A DNA stretch of 63,544 bases, filler included, from Reticulomyxa filosa (GCA_000512085.1; 25 parts of 25 records of this genome joined end to end with filler, not necessarily neighbours in it), one strand, 5' to 3'; positions 49,461-59,815 are shown, counted from the whole stretch's first letter. A program made the numbers and translations. The notes: generated by a model not told the origin, from the sequence alone.

Positions 49461-50213
49461 TCGTCGTCAATGTCAGAGATATCTATTATTTTCGATATTT
49501 TGCCATGTGTCTGTTCATCCGCCCAACTATTTATTAGCGATGCAACCAGATTCTTGTCAAGACCGACATTACGAGCGGTACAACCAAGTTGCAGTTTTTT
49601 TTCTGACAACTCTGAGTTAATGATTCTATCTTTTCCAAATACTCTTTTTTTAACGACATAGCTTTTTTTTTTTTTGCATTTTTTTTTGTTATTAGATTTA
49701 TTAAAAAATATGTATACAATATATGTATACAAATATATATTTATACGTATTTAAACTGCAATTAACCCAAAGTCGATTGGCAATTGTCAAAATTGGTTTT
49801 CCTTTTTCACCATTGTAATGTTCGGCCATCAAATCGGATTGCTTTACTAGCCATTGGAGATGCTCGCATATTCCGTATTTCTCTTCGTTGAATGTCGTTT
49901 TAATTGTCTCCACTTTTGTTTCTGTGTCGTCGTTTGTTGTATCACTTTTCCTAATTCGGCTCATTTGCCCATCTACTACCAACGTCTCTCTTCTGCCCTG
50001 CCACGAGTCCCGAATTTTATGTCGTAACTTCGCCTCTGGCAAAAAAACTCTTTCGAATTCATACAGCGTTTGCTTTTGTGCCCCTGCTGCTGCGATCATT
50101 AGTGCAAATTCCAAACTAAAAGGAGAAATAACTACTCTATTCTTTTTTAAGTCGTCCAAAAGACGATTTGAATGCATAACTGGGCTTTCTGAATTATTCA
50201 CAACTTCAGACAT
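49461..50213 (-). CDS. Serpin (serine protease inhibitor), N-terminal portion, 3'-truncated
   Basis: VVISPFSLEFALMIAAAGAQKQT, LTIANRLWVN and, after an intron, INSWADEQTHGKISKII are conserved serpin motifs. Confidence 0.92.
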
Positions 50214-53086
50214 AATAAATTTCAAGACGTTTAGGCACTGATTTCTCAAAATAAGAAAGATTTTGACAATGTTGGCTTTTTTTAGGTATTTAGACTAAAA
50301 GAAAGTTCATACTGAGATCCTCCGAAGTTCAATATTTAATGGAAGCGATGAAACATTTTTCCTGATATTGCAGGTTACAATTGCATAGTTATCTTTTGCA
50401 GAGCAATAAAATTTATAACGGTGTAAAAACCCAGAAACTCATTTGTTTAATATTTTTTAAAAGGCGAATGTTAGTCAAACATTTTCCTTTTCAAAGAGTA
50501 TCTATATTTTTTTCACTACTAATGTTCATTATCTGCAATTTTCAGTGAATATTCTAGTTTTAAAAAATTTGTCAAAACTGTGAACAAATAATAAAGGATA
50601 GAAAGCCGAAAGAAAATTACTTTATCACCAGAGTCACGACGCAGAAAAACAAACTAGAATTAATATTTTTAATACATTGAAGCGCTAAGATACTTCTGCA
50701 CTTTACAATTAATGTGATTGCTTCATCTTTTAAAAACTGAGATAATATTTGACATTGACAATGGCATGAATATAATTATCTTGAAAAGTATATTCTTGAC
50801 AGTTTGATATCTTACAAAAAGGAATGCTTTCGTTCAATATGTTGATATATTCTATCAGTTAAAAAAAGACATTAAAATATTTCTATCTTTTTACGTATTT
50901 TGTATTGATGAAAAAAAAAGAAATTGCTTTTTTGGAATAATAACATTTTGATAAAAATTGAAGTATAAAAAATATATCAAGAAATATCAATATATATTTA
51001 CTAAGCATATATGCCATTATGTGTAGAAAAAAATGATTGCTTTGCTGTGAATGAAAATGATGAATTACTGTATCAATTGGTTTTTTTGAATGTATTGCTC
51101 ATGATTACTGATAATTAATGCAATAACTTCTCACAAATCATTAAAAAAAATTACTTTCTTACATATTTGAATTCTTATTTTTCCGTAAGCGAAGCGTTTG
51201 TTACAATAACATGACATTATAATCCAATTTCAACAGTTAAAAGATTTGCTTCTGTGCAGCCTCAAAAAAAGTGCAATGATAGAGGGAAAAAAATGAAGAA
51301 ATAAAACAAACAGCGTTGGCTTTTACCTATAAAAAATGATAGTAAGATTTAAATCTTTGAAATGTTGCAAATGTGGGAAGGTTGGAATATTATTGAATAT
51401 ATTTAATGACATAGATAATGCTATTCTTTGCATTAGAGAATATTTTGTTCTATTTGTTTTCTCAAGAGTATCTGTGTATATAAAATAGAGTCATAAGATC
51501 GTAACGGTATAGCTCCAAAACCTGAGCACTTCCTATTTTTTTAAAGAGAGCAAATGAATAGTAACATTGCACATTAACTGTATCCAAAAAGAACATACGA
51601 AAAACATAAAAAAAGAAAATGCCTATCAAATGATAAAAATGTGGCATCAAAGTAGTAGCTAAACAATATTATAAATCCTGCTGATAGTATCTTTAGTTTT
51701 GAATCAACAAGCATTAAGTGCTGCTCACACTTTCTCCTACAAATACATCCCAATATATATAGTTTGTCCCGATTCCCACTTTTTCTTTTCTCCAATCCTT
51801 TTCCATTTTTTGCATTTTACTGGACATATTGTATGTGCCCAAAAACTCGCTCTATAAAATACACAACAAATTGTACTTATGTATTTTTCTCTCAAATACT
51901 CTCTGGGTTATAGTTTTATAACTGGCTCAGAAGACGTGTGTTTGTCTTTCTCCATTTTCTTTTTCCGCAATGTTTTGCGTTTCCTATGTAAAGTAGAGCA
52001 ACTTTAAAAAAATAATCGAGTGTCGACAAAAAAATATTCAAATTACAACGTAAAAAAGAAAAAACTTGTGTTTATTTCGTGGCCGTATTTTGGATTGGCA
52101 GTTCTTGCAACAAAATCCTTCATAAATCATTTTCCCTTCTTGTACCATTAAAGAGCAATAGATACACTTTCTTCCTTGTTTACAATTAGCATTCATACTT
52201 TTGATTTGGCTTTTGTTTTGTTGTTTTTTTAAGTCAATTGTTTTGACTGACTCAATCTATGGGCATTTCTAGCACACAAAAATATTATTTTAGAATACCT
52301 AAAGCGGGCCACTTCATCCGAAGATTTGTTTAGTATGACAGTACGATCAATCTTGTTTTGCTTTCTGTATTGTGCTGGGCGGTTGTTTTCTGTCCCCCAG
52401 CTGTCTCTCACAGGCCGACACCAATTATCTGAACAGGACATCTTACAACTTCCTTGAGTCCTTAATTATAAGCGCCAACACTGAACACAATTTTTGATTC
52501 CTTGGAAGCAATCTTTAGATTCTCAGAAAAGGAGTTTCGTGGGTAAAGGTTGGTAAGAAAAAAAGGTAAAATTTTTCTAAAAGAAGGTATTGTGATTTCT
52601 TTGCAAATTTGAAACTCGCAAACACACAACATCGCTGGGCGCATTTGTACACAAATTTGCATATGTATCGGAGACCGCACAGCAAGAACAGAACAAAACA
52701 AAAAACAACAGCCAAACAAGGTAAAAAAATTAAATTTTCAAAAAAAAAAGAAGACATATGACCATAGATTACAACACAACACAAACCAAATCACCAGAAT
52801 CTTGACAAAAAAATAGTTTTAGACACGCCCCCTAAAAATGTGTGTCACAGACTTTGTACAGTATATTTTCAAGGGTGATACATTTGTGTTGCCCTACTTT
52901 GCAAAAAGTCATTTCACAGTTTTAATTTTATGTTTCAAGCATCTTTGAAAAAATATATTGTATTTATTTTTCTTTGTTTATTTTTTGTTGTCATTTAGTA
53001 AGTTTTATTTTATTTTATTTGAGTTTATTTCATGGCTATTACATTGATTGTATTGATTTATTTATCGTTTTGAAAAGTAATTGAGC

Positions 53087-54988
53087 TTATCTACTCCCGA
53101 CAAGACCTCCACTTCGTTGTGAACCATATTGCAAAGATCTCCTTTTAACTCCAAACTTTTTCATGGTCGTTGTGTCAGCGCGTTTAGCAGTGGAGCGACT
53201 GGACGTGTTGCCACTAGCAGCGGGGCCCAAGAAGGAAGACGAAACAGGGTTCATTGGATTATGCATCCTTTTTCCAGAGTTTTGGTGTCGCAAAGTTCCG
53301 ATGGAAGAGTTGGTGATGGTCATGGGTGTGTTGGATCCTACGTCCACATTTCCAATCCACTGGCCTTCATTATTTGCGCTTCTCTCCGAGTTCCCAATGA
53401 TGTTATTATGATTGGTACTTCGGCCAGAGACTCCAATGAGACCATGACTGCTTCGTTTGGATCGATGCAAGCTTTTGTTGTTGTTCAAGGCACTATTGTT
53501 ATTGTTGTTGGCCAGGTCGTTGCCGCCGCCACCACCATTCATGGAAGATGGCTCTTGGTCCACTTCATTCATATACTTTCTCTCCATCTCGATTTCATCC
53601 ACGACAGCCAAGACTAAGCCAAAGAACAAATTGGTGAAAATCAAGGTGACAATAAACATGAAGCTCATAAAAAAGAATCCCCAGGCAAAGTTATTTGTAG
53701 CCACAATCGTTTCGTTCATGATGTTGTTCCAGCCCTCGCTGACAAGCATTTGGAACAAGGACAGCCACGCCTGGCCGACTGAGGAAAAGCCAAAATACAC
53801 AAACGAGGACGGAGTCAGGGATAAGTACTCGATTTGATTCCCCACCAAGGCTGTTCCGAATACTGCGTAAACATAGAACACTAACAACATGAGCACAAAG
53901 AGACTGGAGAATCTCGGGATGACTTTGAACACAGTATACACGGCGGCACGCGTGGTACGGATTAAAGTGAACATTCGAAACAAAGGGAAAATCATTGGAA
54001 GACGGATCCAAAAGTCTTTTTTATTGGTGTTGAGATAAAAGTTTTTGCCATAGGCCGCTCGGGTGACACAGAACAAGATGACGGAGACGAGCACGATGAC
54101 GAGATCAAAGCGATGGGCAAATTGGCGGTGCAATAATTCCAACGGGTCGTCTTTTCGAGGAGGGCCATACATCATTCCATTGCGCGTGATATCACCCACA
54201 CGGATGAAAGATGAGCTGGTAATTCCAGGATTGAGCAAAGGAGTGGTCTGTGGAAGAAATCCAGTACTGGCATTGCCACTGCTGCGGGGTTGCCAGATAA
54301 CGACATTGGATGGAACGAATGGCCACTGTTTTGACTAAATTTCATTTGATCGTCTTGCACCAATGCAGGCACACTTGTCGGGATTGGTATTAATGGAATG
54401 ACACGACATTTGCTGATGTTCCAGTAATAATCCCATCCATACACGACCAACTTGATAAATACATCAGACCCGTTTAATAGCACGCATATCCCCAACATGA
54501 TATCCAACATATTTAACGATAATAGGCCGGGGTACGTGCCATACATCATTAGCAACATGACTTCGGTCAATATGATCACCAACACGGCTTGATTGAATGA
54601 GTTCTTTTCAATGATCGATTTTCGGAGCCAACTGCGCAGCGAATCATCCTCGACAATATCCGTGACAGTAGGTTTATTGTACAGCCTTTCCAAATGTAAT
54701 ACGAATTCGTTAATTTCGATTTGATCATCGCCGTCGTCGTCGAGACTATCAAAGCCTTGCAATCCGCGCACCAATTCCTTTGCTTCCTTCCCGGGAATGC
54801 GTTTCAAATAGCTAATAAACGATTCAAACTCGGTTCTGGACACCACATTATCATTGTCCAAATTTACCAAGCAAAACGCTGCTATGAACCCAGTGCGTTT
54901 GAAAAATTTGCGTCGCTCTCTTTCATCACTATTGATAGCACTAAATCCTATACAACATTTATGTTGCAAATATACAATATATTTATAC

Positions 54989-55022
<34 letters not shown>

Positions 55023-58000
55023 TGGATATCAAATACAAAATACTATTCTATTGCATACCCTCTTGGAATTTAGACACGACTAATGGAATAACAATAAAGG
55101 TCCCTGCGATGGTCAATAGGATAAAGTAAAAGATGAAACCTTGCGACCTGGCGACGGCGGCGTATACAACGGCTTCGTAATTTTCACCCGAGATCATGAA
55201 CACAAAGCTTTGCATCATGGAGCGAATAAAATTATAAAAGGACTGAAGGTTGGAATACTCTAAGAAAATGCCGAATCGGAAGATTAGAGTCCCCGTAACG
55301 GCGGCGATAGCCCACACCACAAAGTACAACACGACACCATCTCTGGCCTCGTACATGGTCAAAAGAAAGGCATACAAAGCACCAAGCAATGTATCATTGG
55401 CCAGAATCAAAATAAACGGCCGCACATCAAAGTACCCGGACAGGACAAAGTACGAAGCGTGCGCGACAATGACGTCCAAGATGACAAGGACAATGAGGAT
55501 AACGCGGAAGACAAACACACGCATTTGTTGTCCGGGAGATATCAACGAATTGGCCTCATTGTCTTGCCAGCGGAATTGAATTAGTCCAGTCATCCAAATG
55601 TCCAATATTTCGACAAACACGAACAGGAATTCGGCTGTTAAAATCCCGGTGCTATAGCCATGATGTTTGCGCAATGTCTCTCGACTGTAAGGTTTCCAAA
55701 AAGCTAAAAACAAGTGAGCGATCATGACACAATGGAAAAACGTGAACCAAATCTTGCTCGAATGGAACGTATACAAAGTCAAGCGGTGCCACGAATGGCG
55801 ACCAATCTGTTCCATTTGCACCACGGTGATAATGTTTAATCCCTGTTTGGCCTGTTTGATATGGTTTAAAGCTCGTTTGTGATAATGGTCCAACATGTCT
55901 TGTCTCGATGTCGGGTTATTCCTCGTCGTGTCATGCTCGCGCAGCCAACTCTGCAGACATGCGTCACGCACTGACTGTCGAATATTTTCGCAAATGAATT
56001 CTAGCACATTTGTGTCTGAATTGATTGCCCATCCATCGCTTTCTGTTTTTTTCGCGTTTTCATTCTCCACACCGCCGTTCGGATCCGCGACACTGTTGCG
56101 AAGCGTCCCACTGTTGCCTTGCTGCTGCTTTTTAGGTGAAGATACTGCAGGGGGGATTAAGGCGCTGACCAAAGGCAAATTTGATGGGCGCTCTTGATCT
56201 TGATCTTGCTCTTGCTCTTGTTCTTGTTCTTGTTCTTGTTCTTGTTCTTGTTCTTGCTGTTGTCGTACTAACTGCTTCTCTTCCGACAAAAATCGCATCA
56301 ACTGACGCTCCTCTTGGGCGAATATTTCGTCCTCATTCATTCCGTGATAGTGTCCGGAGAAGTCGTCCATCCCACTCCACCCGTATTTCTTGTTCAGCCA
56401 CATCAAGTATTCATCTTCCCACTGCTCTATTGTTGATTCGAAATTACGTCGACTCACTGCGTAAATATACGCTAAAATCTTAATTAATTATTTATTTATT
56501 TGTTTGTTTGTTTGTTTACATAAATAAATAAATCAACCAATCAATAAAATGTGTGAATGTGTGTGTGTGTGCCATTCGACTTACAATCAAAACTCCAGCG
56601 ATGGAAATGATGCCCAAAGCTGCATATTGCTCAAAGTCCCCACTAAACACTTGCTGTGACAAGCTGAATACCAGAATCCAGTCCAATTTGGTCCAATAGA
56701 TGCAGTTGGTAATGCTGGACTTATCGCTGCAGTTGCATTTGGTAATGTTAGACTCGCCGTTGAACACGTATACGCCAATGGCGGGATAGCCGAATATCTG
56801 CTTGAGAGTTGAGAAATGGTCTGGCATGGGTATTTGATTGGGCGACGACTGGATCAAGTATTGCGTAACAGACGAGATGGTGGTATCGTTAACGTCTTCG
56901 GCCTGCGTAACGTAGGAAATGGTATCGGAATATGGGGACAGTGCGGTGGAGGTTAAGTTTGACTTGTCGTTTCGATCAAGTACCATTTGGGGGAATTCGA
57001 TATATTGTAATATCTACAATTGCATCGTGCATTGGTCATGGCGAACAAGGAAAAGTTTAAGTACGACATGGTCACGGTCTTATTGGGACGGTGAAGCTTT
57101 TGCAATGTGGCGAGTTTACTTGGATTCCAAATATGGTCGTGGACAATATTGGAAACATTTCGAAAGGAGAGCAAGACGCCAATGAAATTTGTGCTGGAAA
57201 TTTTATACAGCCCTAGGTAACAAACAGTCGCGCCGCGGAAGCACGAGTAAGGCTTTGACCATGCCACCATAACTTCTTTGTCAGTGAAGTAGTCGATCAA
57301 TTCGAACGTGGCTTTGAACGTCACACAGTCTCGAATCTTGCTGTTCGTGGATGAAACTTTCCACCACAAGCACTTGTCGTTACTCACACCTGTGGACAAT
57401 TGCAAGTTAGTGTCATTCGCGAACGCATATCCCTGCGTAAATTTGTAGCTGGTCGTGTTTTCCACTCTCACCACACCCAACACCTTATAGCTTTCCCAAA
57501 ACGTAAACAAGTCACTGTTATCTGTCTTATTCGCCACATACATCTTTTTAAAGTTTTGCAACATCAAACGGCCTTTCAAGTATTCGTATTCCATTCCTAA
57601 TTCGCCAATGCTCGTAGCAATGGACATATAGTTTTGCCTCATTTCTTTGATCGCGTTCGACGCCAGCGATCGACACCCGGTATAACTCAAGCCAATGCAT
57701 ACCAATACCAAAATCGCCAGTATTGTTTGTGCTCGCGAGGCATACACACCCCATTTGGTCTGCCATTGACTCAATTCGCGGTTAAATATAGATCGCATCA
57801 ATTGTCGCTTGATATTCGACTGCAGATGTTTTTTCTGCTCTTCCTTTTTCCAATTTCGAATGTGCTGTCTCACCTGCTTCGCCGACATTTTATCCACACG
57901 CTGTTTCGCCGCCATCACATCTGCCGTTCTCGCACGTCGCAACATCGGACCCTGTTCTTCGGTCGCCGTTGACTCTTCTTTTTTTATCGCTTTCGCCAAC

Positions 58001-59698
58001 TGTGGGCCCGTAAGTAATACTTCCCCACTCGTCACATCTTCATCATCATCATCGTCATCATCGTTATCATCATCATTATTGTTATCATCATCATTATCAT
58101 CGTTTCTCTTTTTGCTATTGTGGTTATCGTCATTGGTATTATATTCATCATCGTCAAATTCATATTCCTTCTCTTTCTCATTTCTGTCATTCAAGTCCAG
58201 CAATAGATTCAGTCGAGGTTGTTCTTCCATGTTCTGCAACACCTCTATTTTTTTTTTGTCCAGCTCCGAAGGATGCGTACTTCCTATGGAATGTCTTCGA
58301 GGTGTTGTTTTGTTGCTTGAAACGTTACCACCAGTATTTTTTTCATCCGCATCATTTGCATTTGCATTTGCATTGGCATTGTCTTTATTCTTGTCGCTGG
58401 CATCGCCATTGATATTGTTGTCTCCATCAGTGGCCGACTTTTGTAATGATACCAGTTCCACTTGTTGTTGTACGGCGTAGGAGTTGGGATTGACGGATGC
58501 CATGTCGTTCTTGTCAATGGTCCTGGTGTAGCGCAGATCCCGAATTTGCGACAGCAGTTGATCCTTCTGTTGTTTAGCCTTCACCATAATATCCTTCACG
58601 ATCGCCGCGTCCGGGCCTTTGTTTCCTGTCTCCTCGTAAATGGTCGCAAAGAACGGATGAAGGCGATACCGTTCGTCAGAGGGGATAACGGGTACCGCCT
58701 GGCCAACGAAGCCGACGATGATGGCGAGGAGACAACCTAAGCCTGTCAGCACAACGACGACAGAGAAAGCGTTATTGGCGTTTTGGTTGACGGCATCCAA
58801 GGGATAGACGATAACACACCAAAAGCATAGTCCTTTGCCAAGGTTAACTCTTCGCGTGTACATAGAATATTGTTGATCGTAGTGCAATTGGCCGCTCGTC
58901 TTGTCGAGATATTTACGTCGACTTTTGAAGTCTCCAATGGTCTGTGCAATTGCTTTGGAGTACGATGTCTTGTTTGCATCTTCATGGTTGTCACTAAACG
59001 TGGTGCCACTACTGTTCAGACTGATATTGCTGTTCTCACTGCTGTGCGACGAGATTTGATAGCCCTGCTCGTAGGTCGAACTGACAAACACATCGGCATA
59101 ATCGTCGTCGCTGACCCAATACACGACTGCATCAAAGTGTAAATCCAGCGAATGATACTTTGCGTCGATCTGCGAGGAACGCATCACAACGACGGTGGTT
59201 CGATTCTGCTCCTCGTAGTATCGAAATCGCGAGATCCATATGCTAGGCGATCTCCCACGCAATTGTATGTCGTTAAACCAATACAAACGTGTGCCATTCT
59301 TGGACTTCTGGCTATACGACCATATATCGTTCAAAATGTTGGCCAAAGAGGACTTGAGTTGGGCCCCGTTATTCCGATACTCTTGACAAGACAAGCCTTG
59401 AGACAGGTTGCCATTGCAAGCAATTATTGATGTATTTTCTATCACAATGCCATCTACGTGCACTATTCCATTGTTATTCACCAAATCAAATATTCCGTCG
59501 ATTGTCGGCTTCACAATCGTGGATTGAAAGTAGTAATTGTACAACTCACTCGTGTTATCCGATGACATCTTCTCTGCGAAATCCAAAAATCGATCGCTCA
59601 CAAAAAACAACTGTTCCGCGATCAGTTTTGCAGAGTCGCCTAACACCGCATCGCCCATGTTCATCAGGCCTTTTACCGTTGCGTACAATGGCAAGCTC
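53087..59698 (-). CDS. Two-pore channel (2x6TM, EF-hand linker) fused to two N-terminal TM-anchored dCache-like extracellular modules; 5'-truncated
   Basis: Five ORFs join through intron 56479-56584 (in-frame GVLI|ILAYIYAV), intron 54948-55058 (FQEG|FSAI) and two single-base frame changes (about 56955 and about 54287). Pore I is MISGENYEAVV and pore II is FQMLVSEGWNNIM. EF-hands are NLDNDNVVSRTEF and DDDGDDQIEINEF. Sensor motifs are RLYWF..WISRF, AWSKPY, FIGV, WCVIVYP and LDWILVF. Confidence 0.8.
56195..56260 (-). repeat. (CAAGAA/CAAGAG)n hexamer repeat encoding poly-QE
   Basis: QEQEQEQEQEQEQEQEQDQDQE in ORF 55048..56457. Confidence 0.9.
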
Positions 59699-59815
59699 CT
59701 TTTTTTTTAAAATTCNNNNNNNNNNNNNNNNNNNNNNNNNNNNNNNNNNNNNNNNNNNNTTAATTAATTAANNNNNNNNNNNNNNNNNNNNNNNNNNNNN
59801 NNNNNNNNNNNNNNN

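What the first reader, a model, noticed from the sequence alone, without database searches (positions are those of the whole stretch)
53087..59698. Cache-sensor / two-pore-channel fusion: candidate ligand-gated chemoreceptor channel
Seen in sequence: one minus-strand gene with topology [TM1 off-contig]-extracellular module 1 (about 58790-59690)-TM-acidic cytosolic linker-TM-extracellular module 2 (about 56650-57660)-TM-cytosolic linker-6TM-EF-hands-6TM. The join is real at sequence level, because intron 56479-56584 (GTAAGT...TAAG) splices in frame and completes a TM helix (ALGIISIAGVLI|ILAYIYAV). Both modules are dense in N-x-S/T sequons. They also show dCache_1-type landmarks: a long helix after the TM, R..WF, WSKPY (57247-57261), FIGV, and a terminal W-hydrophobic strand (WCVIVYP, LDWILVF) just before the exit TM. 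Established: dCache domains bind small ligands in bacterial receptors and act in trans on Cav channels via alpha2delta/CACHD1, and characterised TPCs lack extracellular sensor domains. Inference: sensing and ion flux are hard-wired in one polypeptide, an architecture I do not recognise as described.
Basis: partly seen in the sequence, partly recalled or inferred. Interest (0 to 1): 0.92.

Follow-up and report, generated by a model that had tools for sequence, protein, structure and literature searches.

The report
Cache sensors fused to calcium-type channel
This Reticulomyxa filosa (foraminifer) gene joins two outward-facing sensor domains with the fold of bacterial chemoreceptor sensors to a two-repeat calcium-channel-like pore in one protein, a design shared by other foraminifera that I did not find described, although its function is untested and this copy carries two frame breaks.

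Summary
On the minus strand of 53087-59706 lies one multi-exon gene of Reticulomyxa filosa. Its order is ectodomain 1, TM, acidic cytosolic linker, TM, ectodomain 2, TM split by a 106-nt intron, cytosolic linker, 6TM repeat I, EF-hand pair, 6TM repeat II.

The fusion is real as a family trait. Predicted proteins of Bolivina argentea and Nonionella stella, listed only by EukProt and probably transcript-derived, are colinear with the gene. So are one environmental ORF and a second R. filosa locus, which has no frame breaks.

Ectodomain 1 models as a double-Cache (dCache) sensor (VIA Z 16; TM 0.72-0.75). Ectodomain 2 does so with less certainty, through a 53%-identical paralogue. No sequence method detects Cache, no VWA insertion is present, and the amino-acid-binding motif is absent.

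The channel has the layout of a two-pore channel (TPC), but repeat II is much closer to Cav alpha-1 domains. Its glutamate aligns with the Cav selectivity filter. "Two-repeat Cav-like channel" is therefore the safer name.

Ligand gating is inference. This copy has two one-base frame breaks (about 56959 and 54268-54214), which are assembly errors or decay. TM1 is off-contig and no RNA run was found. I found no published description.

The parts
58762..59706 (-). Ectodomain module 1 (315 aa), dCache-like double-PDC fold. It opens after a stop at 59709-59707 with candidate AG acceptors at 59700-59696. The exon(s) with TM1 and the N-terminus lie off the piece.
   Evidence: AF2 model pLDDT 66, pTM 0.68. 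Foldseek PDB top hits are nearly all dCache ligand-binding domains, best E 1e-6. VIA Z 16.0, 240 residues aligned, rmsd 3.2 A. Atlas TM 0.72-0.75 to dCache_1 clusters. 8 sequons and 4 Cys.
58705..58761 (-). TM helix after module 1 (TM2 of the family)
   Evidence: Hydropathy 2.87; a helix at the same place in homologues.
57730..58704 (-). Cytosolic acidic, low-complexity D/N/E/K-rich linker (about 325 aa)
   Evidence: Translation; 2 sequons and no Cys; poorly conserved among homologues.
57673..57729 (-). TM helix before module 2 (TM3)
   Evidence: Hydropathy; aligned in all homologues.
56636..57672 (-). Ectodomain module 2 (about 345 aa), probably dCache-like; includes WSKPY at 57247-57261 and four Cys conserved across foraminifera.
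   Evidence: Its 53%-identical paralogue P0004 was used as proxy. The Atlas's own model of P0004 has TM 0.66-0.71 to dCache_1 clusters over 283-296 residues. The AF2 model gives Foldseek E 1e-4 to 1e-3 to dCache domains and VIA Z up to 8.0 on the distal module. 11 sequons and 9 Cys.
56953..56962 (-). Frame break 1: the frame moves back by one base (frame 0 to frame 2) just before the TAA at 56955-56953.
   Evidence: Paralogues P0002 and P0004 align to frame 0 up to 56959 and to frame 2 from 56959. The paralogue locus L001 reads through in a single frame.
56585..56635 (-). First half of TM4, ending at the splice donor
   Evidence: Hydropathy; sequence.
56479..56584 (-). Intron 1, 106 nt, GT..AG, GC 0.245, inside TM4
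   Evidence: same splice in the RFI_14892 model; foraminiferal ORFs continue across it.
55059..56478 (-). Exon with the second half of TM4, a cytosolic linker (conserved juxtamembrane part, E/Q repeats, conserved pre-S1 region) and 6TM repeat I (55752-55078). S4 has almost no positive charges. Pore motif SGENY at 55191-55177.
   Evidence: Hydropathy. 38-42% identity to P0005 and P0006 over the whole stretch. Repeat I of the orthologue matches TPC2 repeat I at E 3.8e-7. Our own repeat I has no Pfam or PDB hit.
54948..55058 (-). Intron 2, 111 nt, GT..AG, GC 0.162. An alternative donor at 55139 gives a 192-nt intron that removes S6 of repeat I.
   Evidence: Gap in the alignments to P0005 and P0006, which keep S6. 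A contig in runs X1 and X2 joins 55140 to 54947 with GT..AG ends.
54269..54947 (-). Exon part with two EF-hand loops (54858-54823 and 54741-54703), S1-S2 of repeat II (54588-54445) and the start of a low-complexity S2-S3 loop
   Evidence: Pfam EF-hand_6 2.6e-4 and EF-hand_7 4.3e-3, both below the curated cut-offs. 76% identity to paralogue locus L001..
54214..54268 (-). Frame break 2: a second move back by one base, inside the S/T/P-rich loop; exact base not fixed.
   Evidence: The paralogue keeps a single frame across the loop. Our frame-0 match ends at about 54268 and our frame-2 match starts at about 54214. Loop GC is 0.466, like coding sequence.
53090..54213 (-). S3-S6 of repeat II, with an arginine-bearing S4 (53980-53948), a pore with filter motif SEGW (53740-53729), S6, and an S/N/G-rich C-terminal tail. 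Stop at 53089-53087.
   Evidence: Pfam Ion_trans 1.5e-21. PDB Cav3.3 3.3e-24. The glutamate aligns with the filter E/E/D/D of Cav3.3 domains I-IV.

Best explanation
What it is. This is one copy of a foraminifer-restricted gene family. The encoded membrane protein has this order: cytosolic N-terminus, TM1, dCache-fold ectodomain 1, TM2, acidic cytosolic linker, TM3, dCache-fold ectodomain 2, TM4, cytosolic linker, 6TM repeat I, EF-hand pair, 6TM repeat II.

Shown here:
- the topology;
- the conserved fusion;
- the Cache-type fold, firmly for module 1 and probably for module 2;
- a glutamate in repeat II that aligns with the Cav selectivity filter;
- a charge-poor S4 in repeat I and an arginine-bearing S4 in repeat II.

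Read from the sequence pattern only: a matching pore glutamate in repeat I (SGENY).

Inferred:
- Two chains form one pore with four pore loops and an acidic, Cav-like, Ca2+-preferring filter.
- The four Cache modules sit on the extracytosolic face.
- Within one chain the two TM-Cache-TM units pair, like the dimer of a bacterial Cache receptor.
- A small extracellular (or luminal) ligand bound in a membrane-distal pocket biases opening. The signal would pass through the flanking TM helices or through contacts with the channel's outer loops. The long, poorly conserved cytosolic linker is a less likely route.
- Ca2+ bound to the EF-hands feeds back on gating.

This copy has two one-base frame breaks and lacks its 5' exon(s) in the piece.
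For: Architecture.

Fusion:
- Bolivina P0006 (1609 aa) aligns in order to module 1, module 2, repeat I with the EF-hands, and repeat II.
- Nonionella P0005 (2886 aa) does the same from module 2 onwards, and its own TM helices bracket a module-1 homologue.
- Pfam finds Ion_trans in P0005 and P0006, the same proteins that carry the modules.
- Environmental ORF P0016 joins the end of module 2, TM4 and the channel.
- Paralogue locus ASPP01006412.1 has the whole order on one strand, without frame breaks.

Fold: and, more weakly, 33, 39, 45, 73.

Extracytosolic side: sequon and cysteine enrichment.

Channel type.

Expression hint: a GT..AG-bounded joint in public contigs.
Against: - No sequence-level Cache signal exists in any family member.
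- The two modules show no detectable similarity to each other.
- The module 2 model is poor: pLDDT 57, with the membrane-proximal half below 50.
- The alignments behind both models are shallow, 8-9 sequences.
- About 90 residues of variable, low-complexity sequence separate TM4 from the conserved pre-S1 region. This argues against rigid coupling through the linker.
- The PctA-type amino-acid motif is not conserved. The Tyr of W-S-x-P-Y is Phe in most homologues, and the R-x-W position reads R/T-D-C.
- No RNA run of R. filosa was found, and the one spliced contig seen removes S6.
- Two frame breaks may mean that this copy is dead.
- Nothing shows ligand binding, conduction or location in the cell.
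Confidence: 0.6

Rival explanations
1. Built-in alpha2delta-like subunit. The Cache modules do not gate the pore with a ligand. They act as a permanently attached extracellular cap, as alpha2delta/CACHD1 does in trans on animal Cav channels, and they set folding, trafficking, surface stability or gating.
For: The pore is Cav-like. Cache modules together with Cav pores are the known animal partnership (PMC8915833). The flexible low-complexity linker after TM4 fits contacts on the outer face better than piston signalling. The amino-acid-binding motif is absent.
Against: The modules have the plain bacterial TM-dCache-TM layout, without the VWA insertion reported for all eukaryotic dCache_1 proteins (no VWA hit). 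Their structural neighbours are bacterial ligand-binding sensors. Alpha2delta itself binds amino acids, so the two readings overlap.
Confidence: 0.25
2. The family is real, but this copy is a decaying pseudogene. The two one-base frame breaks are genuine, and only the 901-aa sensor fragment, or nothing, is made from this locus.
For: There are two frame breaks relative to paralogues that read through. The public annotation calls only a 901-aa protein, P0001. R. filosa has at least five other loci with parts of this family: RFI_16871, RFI_08245, RFI_23494, RFI_14892, RFI_06370.
Against: Apart from the two breaks, every exon is an intact frame with conserved TM helices, filter motifs and splice sites. 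Both breaks are single missing bases, which also fits consensus errors in a draft assembly. Public contigs that match exons 100% include a spliced joint.
Confidence: 0.3
3. Two neighbouring genes, as annotated: a Cache-like membrane protein and a separate channel gene that are merely adjacent. On this view the long foraminiferal ORFs are chimeric assemblies.
For: The R. filosa annotation splits them here (P0001) and at the paralogue locus (1479-aa and 1066-aa genes 226 nt apart). No R. filosa read spans the junction.
Against: The split falls in the middle of a TM helix at a GT..AG intron that restores the frame. The RFI_14892 model itself splices across it. Three independent ORFs from other sources run continuously from module 2 into the channel. 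The annotated channel model RFI_06370 starts with the exon's first conserved residues (MQWEDEYL), not at a natural N-terminus.
Confidence: 0.06
4. The ectodomains are not Cache-related. The models converge on a common alpha/beta sensor shape by chance or by prediction bias.
For: There is no sequence-level signal. The alignments are shallow and pLDDT is moderate or low. For module 2, VIA Z is 8.0 or less, a range the tool itself calls middling.
Against: Module 1 has Z 16 over 240 residues, 158 chains at Z 8 or more, and a top-50 list made up of double-PDC sensor domains (dCache ligand-binding domains and CHASE). Two predictors (AF2 and the Atlas's own model) and the language-model feature search point to the same family for two unrelated-looking modules. 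The TM-domain-TM context matches that family.
Confidence: 0.1

Closest known systems
Bacterial dCache_1 sensor domains of chemoreceptors and histidine kinases (PctD 7prq, TlpQ 6fu4, Tlp3 4xmq, vpHK1S-Z8 3lie)
   Same: Predicted fold: a long stalk helix with membrane-distal and membrane-proximal PDC modules. Size is about 300 aa. The domain sits on the extracytosolic side between two TM helices.
   Different: There is no detectable sequence similarity or Pfam match. The protein is eukaryotic, rich in sequons and has conserved cysteines. Two units stand in one chain. The output is an ion-channel pore, not a kinase, MCP or cyclase module. The amino-acid motif is not conserved.
Animal alpha2delta / CACHD1 (Cache-containing partners of Cav channels)
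   Same: Cache-fold ectodomains are associated with a Cav-type pore.
   Different: The animal partners are separate polypeptides with nested dCache domains and a VWA insertion, which PMC8915833 reports for all eukaryotic dCache_1 proteins. Here two plain, un-nested modules without VWA are joined covalently to the pore-forming chain.
Two-pore channels (plant TPC1 5e1j, human TPC2 6nq0)
   Same: Two 6TM repeats in one chain, so a dimer is expected. Repeat I has a charge-poor S4 and repeat II has arginines. An EF-hand pair lies between the repeats, as in plant TPC1. The orthologue's repeat I matches TPC2 repeat I (E 3.8e-7) and its repeat II matches AtTPC1 repeat II (E 1.5e-5).
   Different: Repeat II scores far better against Cav alpha-1 domains (E 3e-26 to 1e-20). 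It has a Cav-type filter glutamate, whereas TPC filters lack an acidic ring (my own knowledge). An N-terminal extension of about 1200 or more residues carries four TM helices and two ectodomains. Characterised TPCs are endolysosomal or vacuolar and have no such sensor.
Four-domain Cav channels (Cav3 T-type 7wli, Cav1)
   Same: They are the best sequence matches for repeat II. The pore helix and filter motif (FQ..(T/S)xE(G/D)W) are shared.
   Different: This protein has two repeats, not four, a strongly diverged repeat I, EF-hands between the repeats, and fused ectodomains.

Membership tests
Cache superfamily / dCache_1 (Pfam PF02743, clan CL0165) | Significant match to a Cache-family sequence model | tested here: not met
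   No Cache model at E up to 1 for the exons, or up to 10 for any of the 17 aligned family members. Profile searches of solved structures found no Cache domain.
Cache superfamily / dCache_1 (Pfam PF02743, clan CL0165) | Double PDC/PAS-like fold on a long N-terminal helix | tested here: met
   Module 1: VIA Z 16.0 with 240 residues aligned; Foldseek probability 1.00 to dCache ligand-binding domains; TM 0.72-0.75 to dCache_1 clusters. Module 2 (paralogue proxy): Atlas model TM 0.66-0.71. In my AF2 model only the distal module is confident, with Z up to 8.0.
Cache superfamily / dCache_1 (Pfam PF02743, clan CL0165) | Extracytosolic position between two TM helices, the second leading to the output module | tested here: met
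   TM helices flank both modules here and in homologues. Sequons and cysteines are enriched in the modules only. The side of the membrane is predicted, not measured.
dCache_1AA (amino-acid-binding subclass, PMC8915833) | Conserved Y..R.W(Y/F) ... Y ... D motif in the distal module | tested here: not met
   By inspection of alignment A2, the position before W-S-x-P reads R/T-D-C rather than R-x-W, and the Tyr of P-Y is Phe in most homologues. No structure-based residue mapping was done.
Eukaryotic alpha2delta / CACHD1-type dCache proteins | VWA domain inserted in a dCache_1 domain (PMC8915833) | tested here: not met
   No VWA hit in the exons or in any homologue. At 315 and about 345 aa the modules leave no room for one.
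Two-pore channel (TPC) family | Two Ion_trans 6TM repeats in one polypeptide | tested here: met
   Hydropathy shows two six-helix sets. Pfam Ion_trans scores 1.5e-21 for repeat II. Repeat I is recognised only through the orthologue (two Ion_trans stretches).
Two-pore channel (TPC) family | TPCs are the closest relatives by sequence | tested here: not met
   Against solved structures, Cav3 scores 3e-26 and Cav1 1e-20, while TPC2 scores 3.8e-7 and AtTPC1 1.5e-5. No phylogeny could be built with the sequences on hand.
Two-pore channel (TPC) family | TPC-type selectivity filter without an acidic ring | tested here: not met
   The glutamate of repeat II (SEGW) aligns with the E/E/D/D filter positions of Cav3.3. 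Repeat I has SGENY. The TPC filter make-up is my own knowledge.
Plant TPC1-like Ca2+ regulation | EF-hand pair in the linker between the repeats | tested here: inconclusive
   EF-hand_6 scores 2.6e-4, EF-hand_1 1.2e-3 and EF-hand_7 4.3e-3, all below the curated cut-offs. Two loops with acidic ligand positions lie at 54858-54823 and 54741-54703. The pair is conserved in P0005.
Four-domain Cav/Nav/NALCN channels | Four homologous 6TM domains in one chain | tested here: not met
   There are only two repeats before the stop at 53087-53089. The orthologues also have two.

The most novel reading that the evidence does not exclude
Foraminifera have a previously unrecognised class of ligand-gated Ca2+ channel. 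Two bacterial-type dCache chemoreceptor modules in the same chain directly gate a dimeric, Cav-filter, EF-hand-regulated pore. A chemical cue would then become Ca2+ entry in one molecule, for example to steer the reticulopodial network. This would also be a eukaryotic Cache lineage outside the VWA-containing alpha2delta/CACHD1 clade.
Probability: 0.35. Interest if true: 0.9.

Novelty: new variant of a known kind. Interest (0 to 1): 0.78.

Why it matters
Cache domains are the most widespread extracellular sensors of prokaryotes. In eukaryotes they are known mainly as alpha2delta and CACHD1, which act on Cav channels as separate subunits. They are the target of gabapentinoid drugs, and what they sense physiologically is still debated.

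A natural protein with Cache modules covalently joined to a Cav-type pore would give a direct system for asking how a Cache domain talks to a voltage-gated-type channel. It would add a new way of building a ligand-gated channel, beside the iGluR, Cys-loop, P2X and CNG designs. It would contradict the published generalisation that every eukaryotic dCache_1 protein carries a VWA insertion (PMC8915833). It would also give a molecular handle on chemosensing and Ca2+ signalling in foraminifera, where almost nothing is known.

It also shows that the R. filosa annotation splits these genes in two.

Tried and rejected
1. Similarity between modules 1 and 2: BLASTP and profile-profile comparison found nothing, so a tandem duplication can be neither shown nor excluded.
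2. Sequence-level Cache membership: Pfam on the exons and on all homologues, and profile searches of solved structures, all negative.
3. RNA evidence: no RNA run holds the gene. The two listed runs are one 'synthetic metagenome' study covering about 10% of the stretch. They cover neither frame break nor intron 1.
4. Small introns as the cause of the two frame shifts: rejected. Paralogues read through in a single frame, no GT..AG pair fits, and local GC is exon-like (0.47 against 0.16-0.25 in the introns).
5. A 206-nt intron at 54396-54191, suggested because Bolivina has no residues there: rejected, because the R. filosa paralogue conserves this stretch as coding at 76% identity.
6. The 192-nt joint as the normal intron: rejected. 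It deletes the S6 helix that P0005 and P0006 conserve, so it is an alternative or aberrant donor.
7. More homologues for deeper alignments: two word-based searches added only one paralogue. The channel search found only foraminifer-like sequences.
8. Our own repeat I against solved structures: no hit. An earlier hit to FAM155A lies in the E/Q low-complexity stretch and is spurious.
Exons were searched separately by reference, and intact paralogues and orthologues served as continuous proxies.
11. No complex prediction was run.
Full report
SOURCE AND GENE MODEL

Paralogues of the encoded protein are named proteins of Reticulomyxa filosa (Foraminifera, Rhizaria): RFI_16871, RFI_08245, RFI_23494 and RFI_14892. 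The public annotation holds a 901-aa product (P0001) that is 100% identical to the first open frame here.

On the minus strand, five open frames tile 59706-53090:
- A: 59706-56956
- B: 57013-56519
- C: 56487-55051
- D: 55047-54175
- E: 54334-53090

The join fuses GVLI to ILAYIYAV inside a TM helix.

C joins D through a 111-nt GT..AG intron, 55058-54948, in phase 1.

A-to-B and D-to-E are not introns. Each needs the frame to move back by one base, that is, one base is missing. Paralogues read through both places in a single frame. The breaks lie at about 56959 (...TSQ / NLT...) and within 54268-54214, in an S/T/P-rich loop. They are either consensus errors of a draft assembly or real lesions, and I could not decide which. 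The only public runs that hold parts of this gene do not cover either site.

I built and searched no joined or corrected protein. Each exon was used by reference, and intact homologues were used where a continuous sequence was needed.

TOPOLOGY

Hydropathy gives single TM helices at 58761-58705, 57729-57673 and 56635-56585 (continued at 56478-56455). It also gives two sets of channel helices.

They hold 4 and 9 cysteines. The linker between them has 2 sequons and no cysteine.

The piece begins with a stop at 59709-59707, followed by AG acceptors. Homologues carry a TM helix just upstream of module 1: P0002 at 70-88, P0007 at 126-144 and P0005 at 888-906. 'TM1 off-contig' is therefore the likely reading.

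IS THE FUSION REAL?

An exhaustive HMMER search with frame A found only 13 proteins. Two come from other foraminifera and are held only by EukProt. Their record names look like transcript ORFs, and transcriptome data for both species are reported in PMC8153729; I did not verify that source link. They are Nonionella stella P0005 (2886 aa) and Bolivina argentea P0006 (1609 aa).

- Pfam finds Ion_trans in both proteins and a weak EF-hand pair in P0005.
- By tblastn, P0006 aligns in order to module 1, module 2 (both sides of frame break 1), repeat I with the EF-hands, and repeat II.
- P0005 does the same from module 2 onwards. Its TM pattern brackets a module-1 homologue as well.
- Both run from the TM4 helix straight into the conserved RR(N)F..I..WE..Y segment that follows the intron here.
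- An environmental ORF, P0016, joins the end of module 2, TM4 and the channel.
- A second R. filosa locus (ASPP01006412.1, locus L001) carries RFI_08245 and, 226 nt downstream on the same strand, an Ion_trans gene. The foraminiferal proteins and all five of our exon frames align to it in order, with no frame breaks.
- The annotated model of RFI_14892 itself splices across the TM4 intron.
- The channel model RFI_06370 starts at the first conserved residues of the post-intron exon.

The two-gene annotation is therefore best explained by a missed intron.

A contig present in two runs of one study joins 55140 to 54947 with GT..AG ends and uses the same acceptor as intron 2. This points to cDNA-derived sequence. 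The joint removes S6 of repeat I, which the orthologues conserve, so it is an alternative or aberrant splice.

WHAT ARE THE ECTODOMAINS?

By sequence they are nothing known. There is no Pfam hit in the exons or in any of 17 aligned family members. Their profiles find no solved structure. Module 1 and module 2 show no similarity to each other.

By predicted structure the answer is clear for module 1:
- The AF2 model on a 9-sequence alignment has pLDDT 66 and pTM 0.68. It shows a long N-terminal helix followed by two alpha/beta modules.
- The Foldseek top 50 in the PDB consists almost entirely of dCache ligand-binding domains: PctD, TlpQ, Tlp3, TlpA, Mlp24 (best E 1e-6, probability 1.00).
- VIA-align gives Z 16.0 (3lie_B, 240 residues, rmsd 3.2 A), with 158 chains at Z 8 or more.
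- The ESM Atlas shape search gives TM 0.72-0.75 over 271-286 residues to clusters in which 86-96% of members carry PF02743.

For module 2 I used the intact paralogue P0004, which is 53% identical, because of the frame break:
- The Atlas's own model of P0004 matches dCache_1 clusters at TM 0.66-0.71 over 283-296 residues.
- My AF2 model is poor (pLDDT 57), and only the distal module is confident.
- Foldseek still ranks dCache domains on top, beside tandem PAS domains of FixL, at E 1e-4 to 1e-3 but with low TM.
- VIA gives Z up to 8.0 on the helix plus distal module.

Language-model feature searches put both modules next to Cache clusters, with scores of 0.92-0.95.

I rate the dCache-type fold at about 0.9 for module 1 and 0.75 for module 2.

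The amino-acid motif of dCache_1AA is not kept, so no ligand class can be proposed. There is no VWA insertion, whereas PMC8915833 states that all eukaryotic dCache_1 proteins have one.

WHAT IS THE CHANNEL?

Repeat II:
- It hits Pfam Ion_trans at 1.5e-21.
- Among solved structures it matches Cav3 T-type alpha-1 best (3.3e-24), then NALCN, Cav2.2 and bacterial Nav channels. No TPC appears among the 60 best.
- Its motif LFQMLVSEGWNNIM aligns with the pore of all four Cav3.3 domains, and its glutamate falls on the E/E/D/D filter position.
- Its S4 keeps several arginines.

Repeat I:
- It is strongly diverged, with no Pfam or PDB hit for our copy.
- It has six hydrophobic helices, a nearly uncharged S4 and a pore motif SGENY that parallels (T/S)GE(D/N)(W/Y).

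With the continuous Nonionella channel region, Cav3 scores 3e-26 and Cav1 1e-20. TPC2 scores 3.8e-7 (repeat I on repeat I) and AtTPC1 1.5e-5 (repeat II on repeat II).

Two EF-hand-like loops lie between the repeats. Their Pfam scores are below the curated cut-offs.

The layout is thus TPC-like: two repeats, an inert first voltage sensor, and EF-hands as in plant TPC1. The pore is Cav-like. I call it a two-repeat Cav/TPC-like channel and leave TPC membership open. A word-based search with the channel part found only foraminifer-like sequences.

MECHANISM

Shown:
- the order of the parts;
- their conservation in at least three foraminiferal genera;
- the Cache-type fold;
- a Cav-type filter glutamate in repeat II, by alignment, and a matching one in repeat I, by pattern only.

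Inferred:
- Dimerisation gives a four-loop pore with an acidic ring that favours Ca2+.
- The four Cache modules lie on the outer (or luminal) face.
- Each chain's two TM-Cache-TM units could pair like a bacterial receptor dimer, with its four-helix membrane bundle.
- Ligand occupancy biases gating.
- The EF-hands give Ca2+ feedback.

Between TM4 and the conserved pre-S1 region lie about 90 variable, low-complexity residues. Coupling through that linker therefore seems unlikely. Contacts within the membrane or on the outer face, as alpha2delta makes with Cav, are more plausible.

The main rival is a built-in alpha2delta-like modulatory cap. A luminal location, as for TPCs, cannot be excluded.

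NOVELTY

Full-text searches found nothing that describes such a protein. The term sets were: Cache domain with Reticulomyxa; dCache with eukaryotes, ion channel and fused; Cache domain with eukaryotes, protists and calcium channel; Cache with Ion_trans; foraminifera with two-pore channel. The library does not cover subscription journals.

I rate it a new variant (domain architecture) of known kinds, restricted so far to foraminifera. The high interest depends on function.

Noticed in passing
window 49463-50249 (-): Two open frames with weak Serpin (PF00079) matches (E 8e-5 and 2e-3, covering profile positions 13-58 and 109-149). This looks like the 5' part of a serpin gene downstream of the channel gene, cut by the piece's edge.
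   Followed up: partly
window 54948-55139 (-): A public contig (runs X1 and X2, one 'synthetic metagenome' study) joins 55140 to 54947 with GT..AG ends. It shares the acceptor of intron 2 but uses a donor 81 nt upstream, which removes S6 of repeat I in frame. The runs seem to hold cDNA-derived R. filosa sequence although they are listed as DNA.
   Followed up: partly
L001 8192-18454 (R. filosa ASPP01006412.1): At the paralogue locus the annotation lists three same-strand genes (453 aa, 1479 aa = RFI_08245, and 1066 aa with Ion_trans). Together they align in order to the single 2886-aa Nonionella protein, so they are probably one gene of about 2900 aa that was split by annotation.
   Followed up: partly
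P0005 residues 1-900; L001 8866-11492: Family members have a conserved cytosolic N-terminal region of about 900 aa before TM1, with no Pfam match. In our gene it would lie off the piece.
   Followed up: no
window 50250-53086: An AT-rich stretch (GC 0.25-0.35) between the serpin fragment and the channel gene's stop, without long open frames. It probably holds the 3' UTR and intergenic DNA.
   Followed up: no
window 56186-56269 and 57960-58200 (-): Simple coding repeats: an E/Q repeat in the post-TM4 linker, which causes a spurious match to FAM155A, and D/N-rich runs in the linker between the modules. Read laying skipped the first of these, with the two introns, as repeats.
   Followed up: no
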